Notes: generated from the letters alone by a model not told the origin. 64,000 nt of DNA from Octopus sinensis (GCF_006345805.1 NW_021824847.1:1-64000), one strand, 5' to 3'; positions 8,625 through 56,649 are shown, counted from the first letter of the stretch. Translations and numbers: made by a program.

Positions 8625-8695
8625 GCATCGGTGGTTCAGTGGAAGAATGCTTGCCTGCCACGCGGGCGGCCCGGGTTCGATTCCCGGTCGATCCA
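8625..8695 (+). tRNA. tRNA-Gly(GCC), probably a pseudogene or degenerate copy
   Basis: GCATCGGTGGTTCAGTGG..GCCTGCCACGCGGGCGGCCCGGGTTCGATTCCCGG matches the eukaryotic tRNA-Gly GCC cloverleaf. It has a C:C mismatch in the acceptor stem, GGA for GGT in the D-loop and no strong oligo-T terminator. Confidence 0.7.
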
Positions 8696-10118
8696 CTTGC
8701 ATTTAAAAATAGGGCGGCGAGCTGGCAGAATCGTTAGCACGCCGGGCGAAGTGCTTAGCCGTATTTCGTCTGCCGTTACGTTCTGAGTTCAAATTCCGCC
8801 GAGGTCGACTTTGCCTTTCATCCTTTCGGGGTCGATTAAATAAGTACCAGTTACGCACTGGGGTCGATATAATCGAATTAATCCGTTTGTCTGTCCTTGT
8901 TTGTCCTCTCTGTGTTTAGCCCCTTGTGGGTAGTAAAGAAATAGGTATTTCGTCTGAATTTAGGAATTCCCAATAAGTTATGAATACCCAAATTGTGAAG
9001 TCAGTTATGTAATAAGATGAAATTAGTTACCCGATAGTAAGAATTCAAATAAAGTAGCCCCGAAAAGGGCTTTAATGCGTTCCTAGAGTATATAGAACAT
9101 AGGAGGAAATACTAATAAGGCATGTATACTAAAATCACGAAGCATGTTACGTAATAACAGGCCAATCAGATATGAGATAATAACAATTCAAAACAAATAA
9201 CTCTGAAAAGGGCTTTTGTACGTTCCCAGAGAATATTCTTTTCTACTATAGGGAAAAGGCCCGAAATTTTGGGGGAGGGGGCCAGCCGATTAGATCGACT
9301 CCAGTATGCGACTGGTACTTAATTTAACGACCCCGAAATGATGAAAGGTGAAGTCGACCTCGGCTGAATTTGAACTCAGAACGTAAAGACAGACGAAATA
9401 CCTATTTCTTTACTACCCACAAGGGGCTAAACACAGAGAGGACAAACAAGGACAGACAAACGGATTAAGTTGATTATATCGACCCCAGTGCGTAACTGGT
9501 ATTTATTTAATCGACCCCCTAAAGGATGAAAGGCAAAGTCGACCTCGGCGGAATTTGAACTCAGAACGTAGCGGCAGACGAAATACCGCTAAGCATTTCT
9601 CCAAGCGTGCTAACGTTTCTCCAGCTCACCGCCCTGTTCCCAGAGAATATTATCCTCAGCGGCGATAGTGTTTATACATTCGTGAATAAGTCACTAACCG
9701 AAATAAGCGATTCTATTGCTTAGGAAAATGCTGTTTTTTCATTTTTAAGGATTGTACTGGATAATCTGAGAAAATAACTCTAACAGTTCAAATACTAAGA
9801 AATAAGCATACTCAATTTGATTTATACCAAATGATTTAGGAAAATGAATGGGTTATTTCCCTTGGCTGTTAAAATGAAATCTATCAGAGATATATAAGGA
9901 TCCTTTCAAGGGGCCAACAATCTGAGTATGACATGAGGTTTCCAGACGTGAGTTCTACGCACGTGTCAAGTTTCATCAAAATCGATAAAGCGATGTAGGA
10001 GGAGTTAGCTAACAACTCCACAAACACACACACACAGAATTTCCCACATATGTATATATATATATATGAAGAAAAAGAACATGGAGATTGGGAACTTAAG
10101 ACAACCTCTAATCGAATT

Positions 10119-23991: not shown

Positions 23992-24027
23992 CTTTCTGTT
24001 GAAGAGCATAGGCTCGAAATGTAAAAG
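23992..24027 (+). ncRNA. Second copy of the same minimal hammerhead family (remnant ~23940-24115)
   Basis: CTTT CTGTTGA A GAGC ATAG GCTC GAAAT GTA AAAG; downstream flank similar to the 3.8 kb copy; ACGT decayed to ATGT. Confidence 0.55.
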
Positions 24028-31065: not shown

Positions 31066-32469
31066 TTAATAACTGCTTCAAGCCACATGTATGGATCATC
31101 ATCACCATCACCACCATCTTTGTCCTCATCATCACTATCACTGTCATCATCATCATCGTTTAACATCTGGTCTCCATGCTGGCATGGAAAGGGCCAGCAG
31201 GGTGCTGTCTGGACTCCAACTCTCACTCTTTTGGCCTGCTCGCTTAGCCAGCGGGGTGGCATCATTTGAAGGCTAAAACAGTGCGAAGCACATTGTGACC
31301 AGCGATGTGTAGCAATGTCTGATAGTCTGGTTGGTCACGTGATATATATATCTTTATATATAAAAGTGAGGTTGTGCGTCTGTCTGTCTCCTATGATTTA
31401 GATTCCTAACTACTCCCACATTTTGCGGTGCAGTTTAACCAAAAGCGGGTATCTTATAGTCGTGATTCATATCGAGCCCTTCTGGGTATTAGCGCGCGTC
31501 TACGATGAGTCAACAATTTAAAAAAAATTTACCATCAATTTTTCCCATTTTTAATGCATTTTTGGCATATATAAGGGAAGTAACTCTCTAAAAATTTATT
31601 ATTAAATCTCAAAACATAAAAAGCTACAGTAACACCACCCCCCTTTGTGGTTAGCCATATTGAGATGGCTATTATACTTTACATCTCTAAAAATGCTTAT
31701 ATAGTTATTTCCCTTACAAACCCGAACAACGCCGGGCGATACTGCTAGTATATATATATATATATATATCTATATATAGACAGACATGCATGCACACACA
31801 GAAATTTGCATATACAGATAGAGAGAGAAGGAAAACATTACAGTGTATTGATTGGACACAATTGACATAAGCTCTTTCCATCTTGTATGAATAAAACAAA
31901 ATATACTCGCACACATAAAGGGAAAGAGAGAGAAAAAGAGAGAGAGGCGCAGGAGTGGCTGTGTGGTAACTAGCTTGCTAACCAGCCAGATGGTTCCGGG
32001 TTCAGTCCCACTGCGTGACACCTTGGGCAAGTGTCTTCTGCTATAGCCCTGGGCCAACCAATGCCTTGTGAGTGGATTTGGTAGACGGAAACTGAAAGAA
32101 GCCCGTCGTATATATGTATATATATATGTATGTGTGTGTATGTGTTTGTGTGTCTGTGTTTGTCCCCTTAGCATTGCTTGACAACCGATGCTGGTGTGTT
32201 TACGTCCCCGTCACTTAGCAGTTCGGCAAAAGAGACCGATAGAATAAGTACTGGGCTTACAGAGAATAAGTCCCAGGGTCGAGTTGCTCGACTTAAGGCG
32301 GTGCTCCAGCATGGCCGCAGTCAAATGACTTAAACAAGTAAAAGAGTAAAAACAGAGAGAGAGAGAGAAAGAGAGAGAAACATTGAAACATTTGTTGTCA
32401 AATCAACAACACCAAACATAGGATGCATAAAGAACAGAGCCAAAGTATCTTCTACCTGTTGTTACCTAC

Positions 32470-32577
32470 CGTCATATACTATGGGAGACTTCTGTCTGAA
32501 GAACACTAATGCTGGTATTACCTTCACACCATATTTGTCACCGAACGTTTGGCTTTGCAATTTCCCATAACGACAGT
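32470..32577 (-). CDS. Thioredoxin-domain protein, exon 3
   Basis: TTCCAG acceptor, G|GTAGGT donor. 108 nt, phase 1/1: (D)CRYGKLQSQTFGDKYGVKVIPALVFFRQKSPIVYD, a typical Trx-fold YGV..IP.LVFFR..P.VYDG segment. Confidence 0.93.
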
Positions 32578-33305
32578 CTGGAAGTAGAGAGAAGAGATAG
32601 AAGTGAGAAACTGACAAACAGGTTTCGTTGGTTGTGAAATCATCATCATCATCATCATTTAGCGTCCGCTTTCCATGCTAGCATGGGTTGGACAGTTCAA
32701 CTGGGGTCTGTGAAGCCGGAAGGCTGCATCAGGCCCAGTCAGATCTGGCAGTGTTTCTACGGCTGGATGCCCTTCCTAACGCCAACCACTCCGTGAGTGT
32801 AGTGGGTGCCTTTTACGTGCCACCTGCACAGGTGCCAGACAGAGCTGGCAAACGGCCACGAACGGATGGTGCTTTTACGTGCCACCGGCACGGGGGCCAG
32901 GTGAGGCTGGCAACGGACACGAACGGCTGGTGCTGTTACGTGCCACCGGCATGAGGCCAGTCAGGGCGGCGCTGGCAACGGTCACGAATGGATGGTTCTC
33001 TTACGTGCCACTGGCACTGGTAACTCATCTGCAATTTCCATTGATCGATTTCGATTCTGATCCTCTGAAATGCTAGCTTTTATGTATAACAGATTATAAG
33101 CAATAATAAATCTCTGAACGAGGTATACACAGTAACTGCACGACAATGTGAAGTATATTTACCACTTAAATGTGGCTGACCACTAAGGGTGGATGTTACT
33201 GTAGCTTGTAGCCCCAGGAGAACATCTTCTCCAGCTGGCTATAGGCACAATTTCTGTGACCTATCGGCATTTGCAAAGGGAGGTCATCCATCCCTCGTCA
33301 ACCTA

Positions 33306-33366
33306 AGTGATACGCACGGACTGCAGTTTCTGGGTATTGACCCGTCATCAGCGCACGACAATCACT
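33306..33366 (-). ncRNA. Type I hammerhead ribozyme (unit A of intronic element)
   Basis: - strand: AGTGAT TGT CGTGCG CTGATGA C GGGT CAAT ACCC A GAAAC TGCA GTC CGTGCG T ATCACT. Stem I is 6 bp + internal loop + 6 bp, stem III is the palindrome ACTGCAGT, GUC cut between 33319 and 33318. C.A mismatch at 10.1-11.1. Confidence 0.88.
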
Positions 33367-33660
33367 GGTTTTCGATGGAAGGGTCCCAATGCAAATATTT
33401 ATATCCTTTTTCCAGTGATTTTTCGTGACTGATCTTGAAAAAGTGTATACAAGCAATAATAAATCTCTGAACAAGGTATAGACATTAACTGCACGACAAT
33501 GTGAAGTACATTTGCCATCTAAATATGGCTAACCACTAAGGGTGGATGTTACTGTAGCTTGTAGCCCCAGGAGAACATCTTCTCCAGCTGGCTATTGACA
33601 CACTTTCTGTGCCCTATCGATATTTGCAAAGGGAGGTCATCCTTCCCATTGTCAATCTAC

Positions 33661-33719
33661 GTGATATGGCCAAACACGAGTTTCTGGGTATTGACCCGTC
33701 ATCAGTTCACGGCAATCAC
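33661..33719 (-). ncRNA. Second hammerhead copy (unit B) with mismatched proximal stem I
   Basis: CTGATGA, stem II, GAAAC-TCGT-GTT core are present 354 nt from unit A, but GTGAA does not pair with TGGCC; probably impaired. Confidence 0.6.
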
Positions 33720-34287
33720 CGGTTTTCGAGTTTCTGGGTATTGACTCGTCATCAGCTCACGGCAATCACCAGTTTTCGAGTTTCTGGGTATTGACCCGTC
33801 ATCAGCGCACGGCAATCACCGGTTTTCGAGTTTCTGGGTATTGACCCGTCATCAGCACATGGCAATCATCGGTTTTCGAGTTTTGGGTATTGACCCGTCA
33901 TCAGCTCACGGCAATCACCGGTTTTCGAGTTTCTGGGTATTGACCCGTCATCAGCGCACGGCAATCACCGGTTTTCAAGTTTCTGGGTATTGACCCGTCA
34001 TCAGCGCACGGCAATCACCGGTTTTCAAGTTTCTGGGTATTGACCCGTCATCAGCGCACGGCAATCACCGGTTTTCAAGTTTCTGGGTATTGACCCGTCA
34101 TCAGCGCACGGCAATCGCCGGTTTTCGAGTTTCTGGGTATTGACCCGTCATCAGCGCACGGCAATCACCGGTTTTCGAGTTTCTGGGTATTGACCCGTCA
34201 TCAGCGCATGGCAATCACCGGTTTTTGAGTTTCTGGGTATTGACCCGTCATCAGCGCACGGCAATCACCGGTTTCCGAGTTTCTAGG
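33678..34287 (-). repeat. Tandem array of 12 x 50-bp half-hammerhead units
   Basis: Unit (+) GAGTTTCTGGGTATTGACCCGTCATCAGCGCACGGCAATCACCGGTTTTC starts at 33678, 33728, 33778, 33828, 33878, 33927, 33977, 34027, 34077, 34127, 34177, 34227, with a partial unit at 34277. Confidence 0.97.
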
Positions 34288-34681
34288 TACAATAACATCC
34301 ACCCTTAGCGGTTAGCCGTATTTGGATGGCAAATATACTTCAGATTATACACAATTTGAAAGAAACAAATACATAAAGCAGGAGGGCAAATACATATAAC
34401 AGTAGTGTGGAGCAAACGAGAAGACAACATCGATAGAAACATGTGGTACATCATCATCATCACCATCTATTTTCCATGCTGGAGTGGCATGGATGGCTTG
34501 ACAGCAGCTGGTCAGCCAGAGCGTTGCACCAAGCACCGATTGCCTGGGTCCTTTTCCTAATGCCAACCACTTTACAGAGTGCACCAGAGGATATCCTTGT
34601 TGCTTATTTTGATTTTTATCCCCTTATTTCGAAATTGTACTAAATTCTGGTGCCTCAACTTAAGTACCATATTCATCTGAA

Positions 34682-34721
<40 letters not shown>

Positions 34722-35131
34722 TCTTTTCTCTTTTACTGGTTTCAGTCATTTGACTGCGGCCATGCTGGAGCACCGCCTTTAATCGAGCAACTCGACCCCG
34801 GGACTTATTCCTTTGTAAGCCCAGTACTTATTCTATCGGTCTCTTTTGCCGAAATGCTAAGTAACAGGGACATAAACACACCAGTATCGGTTGTCAAGCA
34901 ATGATAGGGGGACAAACACAGACACACAAACGCATATATATATATATATACATATATATATACATATATACGACAGGCTTCTTTTAGTTTCCGTCTACCA
35001 AATCCACTCACAAGGCTTTGGTCGGCCCGAAGCTATAGTAGAAGACACTTGTCCAAGGTGCCGCACAGTGGGACTGAACCCGGAACCATGTGGTTGGTAA
35101 GCAAGCTACTTACCACACAGCCACTCCTGCA

Positions 35132-35178
<47 letters not shown>

Positions 35179-36422
35179 GGCATAGGTGTGGCTGTGCTTC
35201 CCAACCACATGGTCCAGGGTTCAGTCCCACTCCATGCCACCTTGCGCAATCGTCTTCTACTATAGCTTCGGGCCGACCAAAGCCTTGTGAGTGGATTTGG
35301 TACACAAAAACTGAAAGACACACACAAATAGATATATGTGTGTGTGTGTGTCTCTGCTTGTCCCCCACCGTTACTTGACAACCGGTGTTAGTGTGTTTAC
35401 ACCCCCATAACTTAGCAGTTTGGCAAAATAGGCCGACAGAATAAGTACCAGGCTTTAAAATATAAGTCCTGGGGTTGATTTGTTCGACTAAAACCCTTCA
35501 AGGCAGCAGCCAAATTGCTAAAACAAGAAAAGATAAAAGAAAAGATGATATATATATATATGTGGAGGCGCAATGGCCCAGTGGTTAGGGCAGCGGACTC
35601 ATGGTCGTAGGATCGCGGTTTTGATTCCCAGACCGGGTATTGGCATTGGGAGCAAGCTACTTACCACACAGCCACTTCTATGCCTATGACTAAAATTTAT
35701 TAACATACTACAGAGCATATAAACGAATCATTTACTTACAGATGGACAAATATTTTAGTTTTGTTTGAACCCTTTCGTTACCAATCTGGCTGAAACCACC
35801 TCTGGCTCTGTAATACAAATGTCTTGTTTCCATAAGTCTTCAATTAAAATCTTCTACCAAACCTTAGTCACAATTTATGTTCCTAACACTAGCTTAATGA
35901 TAACTAAGTTATTTTACTAAATTCTTTATTATATTTAAAATTAATTGAAAGAAACAGAGCATCTCAAAATAAATACAGTAACAAAAGGGTTAAAGACATT
36001 CAGTCAAATGTGTCTTCAATTTGCACAAGATTTGACTGCTATTTCTAACAAGTCCAAACAACTATGTGAAACAAAATCTGCAAATTAACCCTTTTCATAC
36101 CAACCCGGTTGATACCGCTTCTGGCTCTGTAGTACAAATGTCTTGTTTCCATAAGTTTTGAATTAAAATCTTCCACCAAACTTTAGTCACAATTTATGTT
36201 CCTAACACTAGCTGAATGATAACCAAGTTATTTTACTAAATTCTTTGTTATATTTAAAGTAATTGAAAGAAACACAGAGCATCTTAACAGAAATACAGTA
36301 ACGAAAGGGTTACTAATTCCAAGAAGAAAATGCCTGCAGCAAGGAAAACAAGGAACAACAACGAAACAGTGGAGACAAGAAGATCTGGTAAATGGTTAAA
36401 GAACAAAAATGCTCAAAGTTAC

Positions 36423-36503
36423 CTTCCAGGAATGTCAAATCAGCCTTTAGTAATTTTTGCATTTCAAACAAAGCAGAATGGTACTCAGCATTTATTTCAT
36501 CGT
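36423..36503 (-). CDS. Thioredoxin-domain protein, exon 2
   Basis: Polypyrimidine tract + CACAG acceptor, GAAG|GTAACT donor. 81 nt, phase 1/1: (Y)DEINAEYHSALFEMQKLLKADLTFLE. Confidence 0.88.
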
Positions 36504-49640: not shown

Positions 49641-51260
49641 GTTTGATTGATGGTTCTCTTCTGGATGTATCATGTGGGGCTGGTCGGTACACAATCTGGG
49701 TCTTCCTAGATTTGACAGTGAGACAAAGGGCGCTGTATGCTCGCTTGAAGGCGTTCAGGATCTGCTAAAGGTTTCCACCCGAAAGAATTTTTTCAGCCAA
49801 TGGTTTTAAGCGATTGTTCATAATCCGAGCAAGTACCTTGCCAGCAGTTGCCAACAAGGAGATTCCTCAGCAATTTCCGTATTCAGATCATTCTCTCTTC
49901 CTCTTTTAGATAGTCACGTTGGTGAGGAGCTGGTACAGTTGATAATGGAATAGGCTTCCGCCGATTTTGTAAATCTCAGAGGGGATCCCGTCCAGCCAGC
50001 GGCCTTGTTGTCCTTCAGGGAGATGATGGTCTGTTTCACTTCAGCAATGGTTGGTAACTTGCTTAAGGAATCTAAGACGTCACTGTCAAATGTGGTATCT
50101 TGATTAAGCAGATCTTCGAAGTGTTCTCCCCACCTCGCGTTGATCTCGGCATTTTTCTTGAGGATCGTTGATCTGTCCTTACTTTTCAGTGGGGCTTGAC
50201 CACTGGCAGATGGTCCGAAGATTGCCTTCGTGGCATTAAAGTAGCCTCTGGTGTTGTTGGTATCTACAAGTTGTTGGATTTCTTTTGCTTTGTCCCTCCA
50301 CCATTCGTTTTTCAGGTTTTGAGTGGTTTTCTGAACTTCGGCTTCGTATTCTTGATATTGCTTGTGTTTTGCAGTGGATCTCTGGTCATTCTGGGAGGCG
50401 ATGAAGGCTTTTCTTTTTACATCGGTAAGTTGTTTGAGTTGCTCATCATTTTCATTGAACTAATCTTGATGTTTCTTGGACTTGAATCCGATGGTTTCTT
50501 TGCAGGTGTCCACAATGGCGGTTTTCAGTTGGTTTCAGTGTTCCCCAATGGGTAACAACGGTTTCACTTCCTGCTGTAATAGTTTTTCAAGTAGTGTTAG
50601 ACAGAGTTCCACTACTTTCTCGAAGTCTTGAAGGGTTTCAACATTGATATTTTGGTTTCGCTGTTTTCTCTTGGGTCGGATCATCATTCCCATGATTGAT
50701 GGAAACAGTCAATGGTCTGTCCAACATACATCGGCACCTATGATTGCAGTTGTCTCCATGACATCTTGTTGGTCTCTGGCATTACAATGACATAATCGAT
50801 CAGTTGACAATGTTTGGAACGTGGATGTTGCTAGCTAGACTTTGTGTTTGGCTTTCTGGCGAAATAAGATGTTAGTGATTACCAGGTCATGTTCTGCACA
50901 TTTTGCCATAAGGAGTGTTCCATTTGCGGTGATTTTGCCAACCCTTATCTTCCCGATGGTGCCTTTCCAGAGGTTGTGATCTCTTCCAACTCTGACATTG
51001 AAGTCTCCTAGTAAAATGATTTTGTCACTTTTGGGGATGGACGAGAGAATGTTGTCGAGGTGGGCATAGAAATCCTCCTTCACTTCATTTTTCCCGGTTG
51101 ACTGTTCGGTGAGTTTGTGTAGACAATTCTTGATGGCAAAATTCACTCCGTGGACTCTTGATTGTTTCGGATCTAGCCCATTCCAGAAAAAAGTATATTG
51201 GCCTTATTCTTCCCTCAGTCGACCCTCTCCAGCTCTGTCGATCATACTCAGAGCGACGAT
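49641..51260 (-). mobile_element. Decayed RTE-clade LINE (APE endonuclease and RT N-terminus)
   Basis: KEDFYAHLDNILSSIPKSDKIILLGDFNVRVG, WTDH, RWGEHFEDLLN and KAAGWDGIPSEIYK motifs, with many stops. Confidence 0.88.
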
Positions 51261-55280: not shown

Positions 55281-56593
55281 CTATATCGAAGGTGAGAACG
55301 ATTGGCAGCTCGGTTTTTTGTAGCAGACGTAGATTGTTGACGTGTTAGAGCGGTCGTAGCCACTGGAATATTCACAGTAGGGCGGTGTCATTTCGCTGAC
55401 ACAAATCCTGCCTGAGCTGTCTCGGTTGATACTAACTTGGCTAAATACTGCTGACTGTTCACAGGAACACATGGAACATACTGAACACGAACACGAACAC
55501 GAAGGCGTCGACAAAGGAGACATATATGAATATCCTGACAAGCAGCTACAATAAGATATTGTCGAAGAATACAAGGGCGAGGAACTTCTGTCCCTTTCCT
55601 CCTTTTCAGCTTTTTTGCGCTCCTCTGAAGTATCACTTTCACCATCTTTTGAACCACGCCTTTTGCCGTCTTTGCGGCGTGATTTGCTGTCTTCGCGCCC
55701 TTTGCCGTCTTCGCGCCCTTTGCGCCCTTTGCGCGCCCTTTGCGGCCTTTGCGCCCTTTGCGACCCTTGCGTCCTTTGCGACCCTTTTTCCCACTTTTCC
55801 CACTTTTCCCTTCGCCTGTACCTTCTTCGCCTGAACCTTCTTCGCCTGAACCTTCTTCGCCTGAACCGTATTCATCGCTTGAACCGTATTCACCGCTTTC
55901 ACCTGAAGAACCACTCCCGTCTTCATCTGAAGAACCGCTTGCGCCTTCCTCCTCCTCATCCTCCCCCTCCCCCCCAGGTCCTAGTTCGCCCCTCGATTTC
56001 TGTTTTCTGCGTCTCTTTGAACTACGCTTTCTAGCACGTTTAGAACTTTTGTCCGTCCCCGAACCTGAACTTTCATCGCTGCCTTCCTCGTCTGTGAGTT
56101 GCGATTCGTCAACACTTCCTTCATCCGACGCCATTATGCCCCTGCCCTTCTTGCCTCTGCCTCTCCTTTTCTTTTTGCGTTTCTTGTCTGCAGAGCTGTC
56201 GACGGAAGCCGAGTCAGAAGCCTTCTTTCTCCCTTTCTTTTTCCTCCTCTTCTCCGCCAGTTTCTTTCTCCTTCTTTCTTCTTTCTCTTTCTCCTCTTTC
56301 TTTGCTGCCTTTTCTTTATCTTCCTGTCTTCTCATCATCAATTCGAACTTGTCCGGTACATAAACTTCCTCTTCCGGCATCTCTTCGTATGCGATACTCT
56401 GTTTGAAAAGTGGACATTCTTTTTTCGCAACACCGAACGGTGTACATTTTGTATAGTCCATGTAAAGATTGAACAACTGCCTTTCATTGTTTTTGGCCAC
56501 GGTGCGTGCATAGTAGGTTTTCCAGTGGTTGTAAGCTGCATAGTCGAAGGCCTCTTGTAACTGGGTTAAGTATTTGATACGGCATCGCCGATA
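55281..56593 (-). CDS. Large terminal exon of an unidentified gene (K/R/E/S/G-rich low-complexity protein) with apparent frameshift at 55731-55732
   Basis: TTTTGTTTTGACAG acceptor at 56594, phase 0: YRRCRIKYLTQLQEAFDYAAYNHWKTYY..., then basic and acidic blocks and (KGR)n. An extra GC in the AAA-GGG-CGC repeat shifts the frame; without it the protein continues KGREDGK...SCSCSCSVCSMCSC...SPSI*. AATAAA at 55192-55197. Confidence 0.8.
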
Positions 56594-56649
56594 CTGTCAA
56601 AACAAAACAAAAAAATAATAATAATAATAAAATCATTAAAAAATGAACT

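What the first reader, a model, noticed from the sequence alone, without database searches (positions are those of the whole stretch)
32578..36422. Self-cleaving ribozyme lies sense inside intron 2 of the thioredoxin-domain gene
The host gene and the HHR element are both on the - strand, so every pre-mRNA carries the half-ribozyme array followed by the GUC site ~740 nt upstream of the exon 3 acceptor. Inference: co-transcriptional cleavage could lower mRNA yield, force splicing across a cut intron, or release HHR RNA under the host promoter. The HHR-like motifs at 23992 and 17843 in the same gene are antisense.
Basis: inference. Interest (0 to 1): 0.7.

Follow-up and report, generated by a model that had tools for sequence, protein, structure and literature searches.

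The report
Hammerhead-bearing retroelement in octopus intron
A small mobile element carrying a hammerhead-ribozyme motif inserted, in the same orientation as the gene, into intron 2 of an Octopus sinensis thioredoxin-domain gene after the split from O. bimaculoides; it is an ordinary kind of animal repeat, and its single complete ribozyme looks too weak to matter much for the host gene.

Summary
The sequence facts hold. The window is Octopus sinensis contig VCDQ01004545.1. A 9-exon thioredoxin-domain gene (identical to XP_029653853.1) lies on the - strand, and intron 2 is exactly 36422..32578. It carries, in sense, a 50-nt array (12.3 units) of hammerhead 5' halves and then one complete type I hammerhead motif (33366..33306, cut site 33319|33318).

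The motif is beyond chance: 1 descriptor hit against 0.01 expected. It sits in a discrete 1,240-nt insertion (34340..33101) with an 11-bp target-site duplication. The insertion has a 5' inverted fragment, a 5'-truncated copy and a full 354-nt unit, which is the Penelope-like/non-LTR-retrozyme insertion pattern. O. vulgaris shares it (18 array units). O. bimaculoides and Argonauta have the empty site.

"Self-cleaving" is not shown:
- No Rfam hammerhead model matches.
- The most conserved pair, G10.1-C11.1, is a C.A mismatch.
- Helix III is the 2-bp palindromic type that works as a dimer, and no second complete copy is present.
- Conservation equals the neutral background.

With one cut site, no unit-length RNA can be released.

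Verdict: a new member of a known kind, probably nearly inert for the host. The empty and filled orthologues make this testable.

The parts
36423..36503 (-). Exon 2 of the thioredoxin-domain gene (81 nt; encodes ...YDEINAEYHSALFEMQKLLKADLTFLE)
   Evidence: tblastn of homologue P0002; read from the sequence; spliced model identical to XP_029653853.1
32578..36422 (-). Intron 2 (3,845 nt, GT..AG). It is 3.4 times longer than in O. bimaculoides (1,137 nt) because of lineage-specific repeat insertions
32470..32577 (-). Exon 3 (108 nt; ...CRYGKLQSQTFGDKYGVKVIPALVFFRQKSPIVYD)
34341..34351 (-). Left copy of the target-site duplication, TGTATAATCTG
   Evidence: Comparison with the uninterrupted O. bimaculoides site ...gtgtatgctctgttatac...
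33101..34340 (-). The inserted hammerhead-bearing element (1,240 nt). Present in O. sinensis and O. vulgaris, absent at the orthologous site in O. bimaculoides and Argonauta hians
33090..33100 (-). Right copy of the target-site duplication (CTTATAATCTG here; exact TGTATAATCTG in O. vulgaris)
34286..34340 (-). Inverted internal fragment of the element's own 3' region at the 5' edge of the insertion
   Evidence: Self-blast: 34346-34285 matches 33498-33559 and 33145-33206 in reverse orientation, 82-89%
33677..34289 (-). 50-nt minisatellite, 12.3 units here and 18.3 in O. vulgaris. Each unit is helix I 5' strand + CUGAUGA + helix II + GAAAC. It has no U16.1-H17 site and no helix I 3' strand, so these are ribozyme halves only
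   Evidence: Differences between units are mostly CpG transitions, and helix II-breaking changes are uncompensated
33448..33676 (-). Remainder of the 5'-truncated copy A, 88% identical to copy B. The 13 nt that should hold loop 3, GUC and the helix I 3' strand read TCGTGTTTGGCCA, so there is no cleavage site
33101..33447 (-). Full unit B. The period between A and B is 354 nt; the unit is 42% G+C, has no ORF, and is moderately structured as a circle (z = -2.6)
33306..33366 (-). Complete type I hammerhead motif. Helix I: AGUGAU/AUCACU, then internal loop UGU/U, then CGUGCG/CGUGCG (two G.U pairs). CUGAUGA at 33351-33345. Helix II: GGGU/ACCC with loop CAAU, closed by C33344.A33331. GAAA at 33330-33327. 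Helix III: AC/GU with palindromic loop UGCA. GUC with C17 at 33319
33318..33319 (-). Predicted scissile bond (3' of C17)
   Evidence: Position of GUC relative to the core; inference, not assayed
32641..33066 (-). Separate SINE-like insertion between the element and exon 3, specific to O. sinensis. It has 65-nt internal repeats, a (GAT)n end and an ATTTC duplication. It is not part of the hammerhead element but sets the 740-nt distance; the distance is about 310 nt in O. vulgaris

Best explanation
This is a lineage-specific insertion of a small non-coding retroelement that carries a type I hammerhead motif. It is of the kind described as animal non-LTR retrozymes, or Penelope-like-element (PLE) terminal-repeat derivatives.

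Shown: the element integrated into intron 2, by chance in the gene's orientation, in an ancestor of O. sinensis and O. vulgaris after the split from O. bimaculoides. It left an 11-bp target-site duplication and the PLE-style pattern: an inverted fragment, then a 5'-truncated copy, then a full 354-nt unit. The 5' half of the ribozyme in the truncated copy later expanded into a 50-nt minisatellite that differs in length between the two species.

Inferred: in the element's own life cycle the hammerhead cuts multimeric transcripts into units that can be circularised and reverse-transcribed. It works as a double hammerhead, in which two copies pair through the 8-nt palindrome ACUGCAGU.

Inferred: at this locus only one complete copy survives, and it has a C.A mismatch at the 10.1-11.1 position. 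Cleavage of the host pre-mRNA is therefore expected to be slow or absent. The insertion behaves as near-neutral intronic DNA, and no unit-length ribozyme RNA can be released.
For: Insertion and empty site:
- The window is identical to O. sinensis L003.
- The element is present in O. vulgaris at 95% identity.
- Intron 2 is 1,137 nt in O. bimaculoides and 710 nt in Argonauta, with no core motif and no blast hit to the element.
- The junctions show an 11-bp duplication.

Architecture:
- Two copies lie 354 nt apart, 88% identical, with an inverted fragment at the 5' edge.
- This matches published PLE insertion structure: partial tandems, an adjacent inverted copy, and variable target duplications (preprint 10.1101/2021.04.23.441226).
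- Unit size (354 nt), 42% G+C and absence of ORFs match non-LTR retrozymes: about 300-bp units below 45% G+C, and 350-390 bp in mussel (PMC7229834).

Motif:
- All core nucleotides are present, with helix I of 6 bp, helix II of 4 positions, and helix III of 2 bp with a palindromic 4-nt loop. This is as described for canonical metazoan type I hammerheads (PMC4209133).
- It is the only descriptor hit, with 0.01 expected.
- Cofolding two copies gives the double-hammerhead structure at -41.9 kcal/mol against 2 x -16.7 for monomers.

Weakness and neutrality:
- C.A at 10.1-11.1 (PMC3088659).
- No Rfam match.
- The hammerhead fold is not the monomer's minimum-energy fold.
- Single minimal PLE motifs gave no detectable cleavage, and a mussel retrozyme gave about 0.1 per minute.
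- The motif's divergence equals the background.
- Array units decay at CpG sites without compensation.
Against: - No assay of cleavage exists, so activity could be higher than predicted. Tertiary contacts between loop 2 (UCAAUA-like) and the helix I internal loop could offset the C.A mismatch.
- Both substitutions between O. sinensis and O. vulgaris inside the motif keep helix I pairing (A-U to G.U, and G.U to A-U). This is what constraint would also produce, although two transitions opposite U carry little weight.
- Transcripts of other family copies could supply the dimer partner in trans.
- I could not retrieve other genomic copies of the family. The family consensus at 10.1/11.1 is therefore unknown, and so is the link to an autonomous octopus PLE. 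The only PLEs the literature I read names for Octopus are Naiads, which lack hammerheads.
- The inverted fragment is internal rather than a clean 5'-truncated copy reaching the 3' end.
Confidence: 0.7

Rival explanations
1. One reading: the hammerhead is catalytically active in the nascent pre-mRNA. It cuts intron 2 before or during splicing and measurably lowers or modulates the output of the thioredoxin-domain mRNA.
For: The motif is sense, complete in its core, has a long helix I (6+6 bp) and lies upstream of the acceptor. There is precedent: the intronic CPEB3 ribozyme tunes mRNA maturation (PMC10919898), and the amniote RECK/CTCL intronic hammerheads cleave in vitro (PMC3088659). Both lineage substitutions in the motif keep pairing. 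Retrozymes are mildly depleted from Xenopus introns, which hints that such insertions can be costly.
Against: C.A sits at the most conserved helix pair. The motif is of the dimer-dependent helix III class and has no second complete copy in the transcript. No Rfam model matches. Conservation is at the neutral level. The insertion is retained in two species while the host protein remains under strong constraint. As a rough inference: at 0.1 per minute (the mussel rate) and Pol II at 1-4 kb per minute (established knowledge), only about 2-7% of transcripts would be cut before the acceptor 740 nt downstream is made.
Confidence: 0.15
2. A domesticated regulatory ribozyme, kept by selection in the O. 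sinensis/O. vulgaris lineage in the way HH9/HH10 are kept in amniote introns.
For: It is retained in two species with the core intact.
Against: It is young: absent from O. bimaculoides and Argonauta. Its divergence does not differ from the flanking insert (P=0.63). The neighbouring array changes length freely, 12 against 18 units. The distance to exon 3 changed by a 426-nt insertion in one species.
Confidence: 0.03
3. A chance match: the CUGAUGA...GAAAC...GUC arrangement is a coincidence inside an unrelated minisatellite.
For: Rfam finds no hammerhead. Twelve of the thirteen cores are copies of one another produced by tandem duplication.
Against: The full descriptor expects 0.01 hits per 64 kb. 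In addition there is a 6+6-bp helix I, an 8-nt palindrome at helix III, a 354-nt tandem unit, a target-site duplication and an inverted fragment. All of these are independent hallmarks of hammerhead-bearing retroelements.
Confidence: 0.02
4. Completely dead ribozyme: the family, or this copy, lost catalysis before or at insertion, and the motif is only a fossil.
For: A11.1 is present in all 32 core copies of both species, so the C.A state predates the A/B duplication. No Rfam model matches.
Against: Natural hammerheads with a mismatched 10.1-11.1 pair exist and cleave (U.U). The rest of the motif is intact after roughly 12% divergence between copies A and B.
Confidence: 0.1

Closest known systems
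Metazoan non-LTR retrozymes (Cervera & de la Pena 2020, PMC7229834), especially the Mytilus 350-390-bp repeats
   Same: Type I hammerhead in a non-coding, low-G+C (42%) unit of 354 nt arranged head-to-tail. The host is a mollusc. Helix III is short and palindromic.
   Different: Only 1.8 units are present and only one hammerhead is complete. There is a C.A instead of G-C at 10.1-11.1, and a 50-nt minisatellite of ribozyme halves. Neither circular RNA nor genome-wide copies could be checked.
Hammerheads in the pseudo-LTRs of Penelope-like elements (Cervera & de la Pena 2014, PMC4209133) and PLE insertion structure (Craig et al. 2021 preprint)
   Same: Partial tandem plus inverted fragment plus target-site duplication; dimer-type helix III; an extra or unpaired nucleotide right after A9.
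   Different: There is no RT/GIY-YIG ORF in 64 kb. Helix II is short (3-4 bp, not 6-8) and helix I long (6+6 bp, not 4-5), which is closer to the 'canonical' metazoan type I form. An extra A also sits before G12.
Intronic hammerheads HH9/HH10 of amniotes (RECK, CTCL/C10orf118, DTNB)
   Same: Type I hammerhead in an intron of a protein-coding gene, thought to derive from a retroelement.
   Different: Those are conserved over hundreds of millions of years and cleave in vitro. This one is restricted to two sister octopus species, evolves at the background rate and is untested.
CPEB3 HDV-like intronic ribozyme (PMC10919898)
   Different: It is a different ribozyme class, is conserved in mammals, and has measured kinetics and a phenotype.
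Newt satellite 2 / Schistosoma Sm-alpha double hammerheads
   Same: Activity depends on two copies pairing through an extended helix III (Forster et al. 1988, cited in PMC4209133 and PMC6155905).
   Different: Those occur as long arrays of complete ribozymes. Here the array repeats only the 5' half.

Membership tests
Hammerhead ribozyme (type I) | Core box C3-U4-G5-A6-N7-G8-A9 | tested here: met
   CUGAUGA at 33351-33345 (- strand)
Hammerhead ribozyme (type I) | G12-A13-A14, the A15.1-U16.1 pair, and cleavage after H17 (not G) | tested here: met
   GAAA at 33330-33327; A33327 pairs with U33320; C17 at 33319
Hammerhead ribozyme (type I) | Three helices around the core, with helix I open and helices II and III capped | tested here: met
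   Helix I is 6 bp + internal loop + 6 bp; helix II GGGU/ACCC; helix III AC/GU with loop UGCA. However, the monomer minimum-energy fold pairs CUG with CAG instead (-16.7 against -12.5 kcal/mol).
Hammerhead ribozyme (type I) | G10.1-C11.1 closing pair of helix II, the most conserved pair besides 15.1-16.1 | tested here: not met
   C33344 opposite A33331. A descriptor requiring a pair gives 0 hits. All 32 core copies in two species carry the A. Literature.
Hammerhead ribozyme (type I) | Match to the curated covariance models (Rfam Hammerhead_1, _3, _II, HH9, HH10) | tested here: not met
   No hit at gathering score, at E<=10 on 5 kb, or at E<=10 on 106 nt. No positive control was run for the tool.
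Hammerhead ribozyme (type I) | Covariation supporting the helices | tested here: inconclusive
   Only one orthologue was available. Two substitutions occur, both in helix I and both pair-preserving. No other family copies could be retrieved.
Hammerhead ribozyme (type I) | Site-specific self-cleavage | not testable with these tools
   Needs in vitro transcription or RNA end mapping.
Double (dimeric) hammerhead of metazoan repeats | Helix III of 1-2 bp with a palindromic loop, allowing an extended intermolecular helix III | tested here: met
   ACUGCAGU is an 8-nt palindrome with duplex energy -11.1 kcal/mol. The cofold minimum is the double hammerhead, -41.9 kcal/mol.
Double (dimeric) hammerhead of metazoan repeats | A second complete ribozyme nearby in the same transcript | tested here: not met
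   Copy A reads TCGTGTTTGGCCA where loop 3, GUC and the helix I 3' strand should be. Array units lack them. The same holds in O. vulgaris.
Non-LTR retrozyme | Head-to-tail non-coding units of about 150-450 bp, below 45% G+C, each with a type I hammerhead | tested here: inconclusive
   The period is 354 nt, G+C is 42% and there is no ORF. But there are only 1.8 units, and only one has a complete motif.
Non-LTR retrozyme | Many genomic copies, and expression as circular RNA | not testable with these tools
   No octopus genome or transcriptome could be searched by DNA. There were no matches in the metagenome or viral collections.
PLE-type retrotransposition product | Target-site duplication at a site that is empty in a relative | tested here: met
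   TGTATAATCTG flanks the insert. O. bimaculoides has the uninterrupted site.
PLE-type retrotransposition product | A full copy preceded by a 5'-truncated copy, with an inverted copy at the 5' edge | tested here: met
   described. The inverted piece is an internal fragment and does not reach the element's 3' end.
PLE-type retrotransposition product | A cognate autonomous PLE (RT + GIY-YIG) sharing the terminal sequence | not tested
   No RT ORF in the window or in loci L001, L002 and L004. A genome-wide search was not possible.
Domesticated intronic hammerhead (HH9/HH10 type) | Orthologous conservation across distant lineages, above the neutral rate | tested here: not met
   Absent in O. bimaculoides and Argonauta. 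2/61 substitutions against a 3.6% background, P=0.63.

The most novel reading that the evidence does not exclude
The single complete hammerhead is active in vivo despite its C.A mismatch. Activity could come from pairing in trans with transcripts of other family copies through the ACUGCAGU palindrome. It could also come from A-to-I editing of A11.1 opposite C, the mismatch that ADARs prefer in an animal with very heavy RNA editing, which would create a C-I pair. I regard the editing route as unlikely because helix II is far shorter than usual ADAR substrates. Either way, the result would be a lineage-specific, possibly tissue-dependent, ribozyme brake on a conserved thioredoxin-domain gene, present in O. 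sinensis and O. vulgaris but not in O. bimaculoides.
Probability: 0.08. Interest if true: 0.65.

Novelty: new member of a known kind. Interest (0 to 1): 0.3.

Why it matters
Hammerhead-bearing retroelements are widespread in animals, and about four in ten Xenopus copies sit in introns. The bare fact is therefore ordinary. My two-term full-text search ('hammerhead ribozyme' + 'octopus') returned no paper describing such an element in an octopus.

What this locus adds is a clean natural experiment. The same strongly conserved gene exists with the element (O. sinensis with 12 array units and 740 nt to exon 3; O. vulgaris with 18 units and about 310 nt to exon 3) and without it (O. bimaculoides, Argonauta). 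The insertion boundaries are exact. That makes the old question of whether a sense intronic retroelement ribozyme costs the host anything directly testable.

The locus also documents the PLE-style insertion signature for a short non-coding hammerhead element in a cephalopod, and shows how a ribozyme half can seed a minisatellite.

Tried and rejected
- Rfam at three stringencies gave no hammerhead. The apparent miRNA hits at 34910-35243 are (TA)n microsatellites inside inverted SINE copies, far below gathering scores, and were rejected.
- Exact and degenerate core patterns in metagenome contigs (both scans used) and an exact pattern in viral contigs found nothing. No family alignment or covariation test was therefore possible.
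- A search for a PLE reverse transcriptase found none. Neither ORFs of >=110 aa in the window nor stop-free segments of >=130 aa in the window, L001, L002 and L004 showed one. By inspection of the translations I saw only LINE-like fragments (for example window 50459-49917); these were not tested against Pfam.
- I asked whether the array could be a permuted (type II/III) hammerhead, or whether its units could serve as enzyme strands or dimer partners for the single substrate site. I rejected this by inspection. The units end in ACUCGAAAA, so there is no U16.1-H17. At most 3 bp of helix III could form with the copy B substrate, and there is no complementarity to ACUGCAGU.
- The 17843 motif was rejected because it lacks C3. 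The 23996 motif has U at position 6.
- An Argonauta core-like match (L004:31529) is one arm of a long inverted repeat, not a hammerhead.
- P0032 (O. bimaculoides isoform X2) was not on record. Isoform X1 (P0152) gave the locus instead.
- The EMBO Rep 2010 paper on intronic hammerheads is not held. I cite it only through reviews.
Full report
**Origin and host gene.** The window is the reverse complement of Octopus sinensis contig VCDQ01004545.1 (assembly GCA_006345805.1). Locus L003, fetched through the host protein, is identical to it over 47,628 nt.

A 63-residue peptide spliced from the two exons flanking the finding hit thioredoxin-like proteins. One homologue, P0002, maps in order onto the - strand from 44883 down to 17289. 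Reading splice sites by eye gave a 9-exon, 309-residue model. That model is identical to RefSeq XP_029653853.1 of O. sinensis. It differs at 2 positions from the O. vulgaris protein and at 5 from the O. bimaculoides protein.

Pfam places Thioredoxin_6 and Thioredoxin domains above their cut-offs. Exon 2 is 36503..36423 and exon 3 is 32577..32470.

**The observation.** On the - strand, Tandem Repeats Finder reports a 50-nt array at 33677-34289 with 12.3 units and 95% matches. CTGATGA-N(6-30)-GAAAC occurs 12 times, all on the - strand within 33326-34254, against 0.24 expected.

Each array unit reads TCGAAAACCGGTGATTGCCGTGCG-CTGATGA-CGGGTCAATACCCA-GAAAC and runs directly into the next unit. It therefore has the helix I 5' strand, both core boxes and helix II. 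It lacks loop 3, U16.1-H17 and the helix I 3' strand. 'Half-ribozyme' is an accurate description.

About 350 nt downstream lies one complete motif, 33366..33306:

AGUGAU-UGU-CGUGCG-CUGAUGA-C-GGGU-CAAU-ACCC-A-GAAA-C-UGCA-G-U-C | CGUGCG-U-AUCACU

- Helix I has 6 bp (CGUGCG pairs with CGUGCG, including two G.U pairs), an asymmetric internal loop, and 6 more bp.
- Helix III is A-U and C-G capped by UGCA.
- C17 is at 33319, so the scissile bond is 33319|33318, 740 nt upstream of the exon 3 acceptor.

I wrote a type I descriptor requiring CUGANGA, helix II of at least 3 bp, GAAA, the 15.1-16.1 and 15.2-16.2 pairs, H17, and helix I of at least 5 bp. It finds this site and nothing else in the window. 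It expects 0.01 hits per random 64 kb. It finds the site only if the first pair of helix II may be mismatched.

**What argues against calling it a proven ribozyme.**
- Rfam's hammerhead models give no match at gathering thresholds, at E<=10 on 5 kb, or at E<=10 on only 106 nt. I ran no positive control for that tool.
- The position where nearly all hammerheads have G10.1-C11.1 is C opposite A. Perreault et al. call this pair the most conserved of the consensus apart from A15.1-U16.1. They note that among mismatches U.U is the most active (PMC3088659).
- PLE hammerheads do carry an extra nucleotide after A9 (PMC4209133). Here there is also an extra A before G12, so the two readings amount to the same 1x1 internal loop.
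- All 32 core copies in the two species have that A, so this state is older than the local duplications.
- The monomer's minimum-energy fold (-16.7 kcal/mol) pairs CUG of the core with CAG of loop 3. The hammerhead fold costs -12.5 kcal/mol.

**The dimer signature.** ACUGCAGU (A15.1 to U16.1) is an 8-nt palindrome. Cofolding two copies gives the classic double hammerhead as the minimum: an 8-bp intermolecular helix III at -41.9 kcal/mol, against -33.4 for two monomers.

This matches Cervera and de la Pena's description of canonical metazoan type I hammerheads: helix I of 6 bp, helix II of 4 bp, and helix III of 1-2 bp with a 2-4-nt palindromic loop. They report such motifs to be inefficient as monomers and active when a second copy is near. 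Single minimal PLE motifs gave no detectable cleavage (PMC4209133).

At this locus the second copy is gone. In copy A the 13 nt after GAAAC read TCGTGTTTGGCCA instead of TGCAGTCCGTGCG. The same is true in O. vulgaris.

**What the thing is.** Self-comparison shows two long copies. Copy A is 33729-33448 and copy B is 33375-33095. They are 88% identical and 354 nt apart. A 62-nt piece of the element's own 3' region sits in inverted orientation at 34346-34285.

Through the host protein I fetched the orthologous loci of O. vulgaris (L001), O. bimaculoides (L002) and Argonauta hians (L004). Intron 2 measures 3,845 nt in O. sinensis, 3,687 in O. vulgaris, 1,137 in O. bimaculoides and 710 in Argonauta.

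O. vulgaris has the element at about 95% identity, with 18.3 array units. O. bimaculoides and Argonauta have no core motif in the intron and no blast hit to the element anywhere in their loci.

The junctions are clean:
- O. bimaculoides reads ...tttcaaattgtgtatgctctgttatacataaaagc... without interruption.
- O. sinensis reads ...aattgTGTATAATCTG|aagtatattt ... gatttattattg|cTTATAATCTGttatacataaaagc...
- O. vulgaris has the exact TGTATAATCTG on the right side.

The element is therefore a 1,240-nt insertion (34340..33101) with an 11-bp target-site duplication. It consists of an inverted fragment, then a 5'-truncated copy that begins inside the ribozyme, then a full unit. This is the structure described for Penelope-like elements and their non-autonomous derivatives: partial tandems, an adjacent inverted copy, and target duplications of variable length.

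The unit has no ORF and is 42% G+C. It folds moderately well as a circle, with z = -2.6. It is 354 nt long, within the 350-390 bp reported for mussel retrozymes and the roughly 300 bp, below 45% G+C, reported for metazoan non-LTR retrozymes (PMC7229834). A 2026 preprint argues that these retrozymes derive from PLE terminal repeats. No reverse transcriptase lies in the window or the other loci.

**Evolution after insertion.** Outside the array, the two species differ at 3.6% of sites in the element. The 61-nt motif has 2 differences (P = 0.63 for two or fewer), so there is no sign of extra constraint.

Both differences lie in the helix I 5' strand and keep pairing: A-U to G.U, and G.U to A-U. 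These are transitions opposite U, which preserve pairing by default, so I give them little weight.

Array units differ mainly by CpG transitions. Changes that break helix II (GGG to GAG or AGG) are not compensated, and one unit has lost G12. The array length differs between the species, 12 against 18 units. The array therefore behaves as a neutral minisatellite seeded by the ribozyme's 5' half.

A separate SINE-like element (33066..~32641) inserted between the ribozyme and exon 3 in O. sinensis only. The 740-nt spacing is thus not conserved either.

In the element's life cycle the hammerhead presumably trims multimeric transcripts to units that are ligated into circles and copied by a PLE enzyme. 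This is published inference (PMC4209133, PMC7229834), not something shown here.

For the host gene, every pre-mRNA does contain the motif in sense. Whether it cuts depends on rate. The following is my inference, not a measurement. I take the mussel retrozyme's co-transcriptional rate of about 0.1 per minute and Pol II at 1-4 kb per minute (established knowledge). On those figures, about 2-7% of transcripts would be cut before the acceptor is even synthesised. A monomer with a C.A mismatch should be slower still.

From memory, not from papers held here: work on ribozymes placed in introns found that only fast-cleaving variants disturb splicing, because exons stay tethered to the polymerase.

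Release of 'HHR RNA under the host promoter' is not possible from this locus, since a unit needs two cut sites. The insertion has been kept in two species while the protein stays 98-99% identical to that of the species lacking it. Intronic residence is common for such elements, about 43% of copies in Xenopus despite a mild depletion.

I therefore rate the element as a near-neutral passenger (0.7). I leave about 0.15 for measurable cleavage.

**Comparison and novelty.** The closest known systems are metazoan non-LTR retrozymes and PLE terminal-repeat hammerheads. The amniote intronic hammerheads and the CPEB3 ribozyme are functional analogies, not relatives by descent at this site.

It fails two hammerhead membership tests: the 10.1-11.1 pair and the Rfam models. 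It meets the others, so I describe it as a hammerhead motif of the dimeric metazoan type with an atypical helix II closure, not as a demonstrated ribozyme.

My full-text search for 'hammerhead ribozyme' together with 'octopus' returned no paper describing such an element in Octopus. It is a new member of a known kind. Its main value is the exact filled and empty orthologous pair, which allows the cost of a sense intronic ribozyme to be tested.

Noticed in passing
It is far better conserved than its flanks. It looks like a Penelope-type minimal hammerhead: an unpaired A after A9, a G10.1-C11.1 pair, GAGC/GCUC as helix II, the palindrome ACGU in GAAACGUA, and a 5-bp helix I (UCUUU/AAAGA). But it has U instead of the invariant A at position 6 in every copy seen.
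   Followed up: partly
window 31596-31684 (+), flanked by CTCTAAAAAT at 31586-31595 and 31685-31694: An 89-nt insertion in intron 3 with a 10-bp target-site duplication. It carries a 64-nt piece of the same hammerhead element family (78-84% identical to 33560-33499 and 33207-33146), antisense to the gene. It is also present in O. vulgaris (L001 22465-22528). This suggests the family made several small, truncated insertions.
   Followed up: partly
window 32641-33066: A SINE-like insertion with 65-nt internal tandem repeats (32805-33017), a (GAT)n end and an ATTTC duplication. It is present in O. sinensis and absent at the orthologous site in O. vulgaris. A related copy lies elsewhere (L001 39734-40130, 89%). 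This indicates retroposition after the two species diverged.
   Followed up: partly
window 32578-36422 compared with L002 15336-16472: Intron 2 grew 3.4-fold relative to O. bimaculoides through at least four separate repeat insertions: intron positions 57-916, 1276-1887, the hammerhead element, and the O. sinensis-only SINE. O. bimaculoides has its own ~425-nt insertion (its intron positions 524-949).
   Followed up: partly
window 34910-35243: Two inverted copies of a ~400-nt abundant repeat flank (TA)n microsatellites and form a long hairpin. This gave spurious sub-threshold miRNA-family hits in Rfam (44 bits against gathering scores of 81-110).
   Followed up: no
window 8625-8696 (+): A tRNA-Gly(GCC) gene or tRNA-derived repeat head: Rfam tRNA 49 bits, and ARAGORN agrees.
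   Followed up: no
window 55391-56596 (-); L004 4732-6381 (+): An open reading frame upstream of the thioredoxin-domain gene on the same strand. It is a K/E/G/S-rich low-complexity protein with a conserved N-terminal part (...ERQLFNLYMDYTKCTPFGV...) and no Pfam match. It has a clear counterpart next to the orthologous gene in Argonauta hians, so the neighbourhood is syntenic.
   Followed up: partly
window 49917-50459 (-); L001 1246-2707 (+): LINE-like ORF2 fragments upstream of the gene, judged by inspection of the translations and not tested against Pfam. They do not look like a Penelope-like reverse transcriptase.
   Followed up: no
L004 31470-31580: In Argonauta, CTGACGAAGGGGCTACTGACCCCGAAA resembles a minimal hammerhead core. 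It is in fact one arm of a ~45-nt inverted repeat (aaaatatcttaccaaattttcggggtc... / ...gaccccgaaaatttggtaagatatttt). It is a false positive for simple core-pattern scans.
   Followed up: yes
L001 20215, 20315, 20415, 20515 (O. vulgaris array units): Four array units carry CTGATGATGGG, a C-to-T change at a CpG. This turns the C.A mismatch into a U-A pair at 10.1-11.1. The complete copy B keeps C in both species.
   Followed up: no
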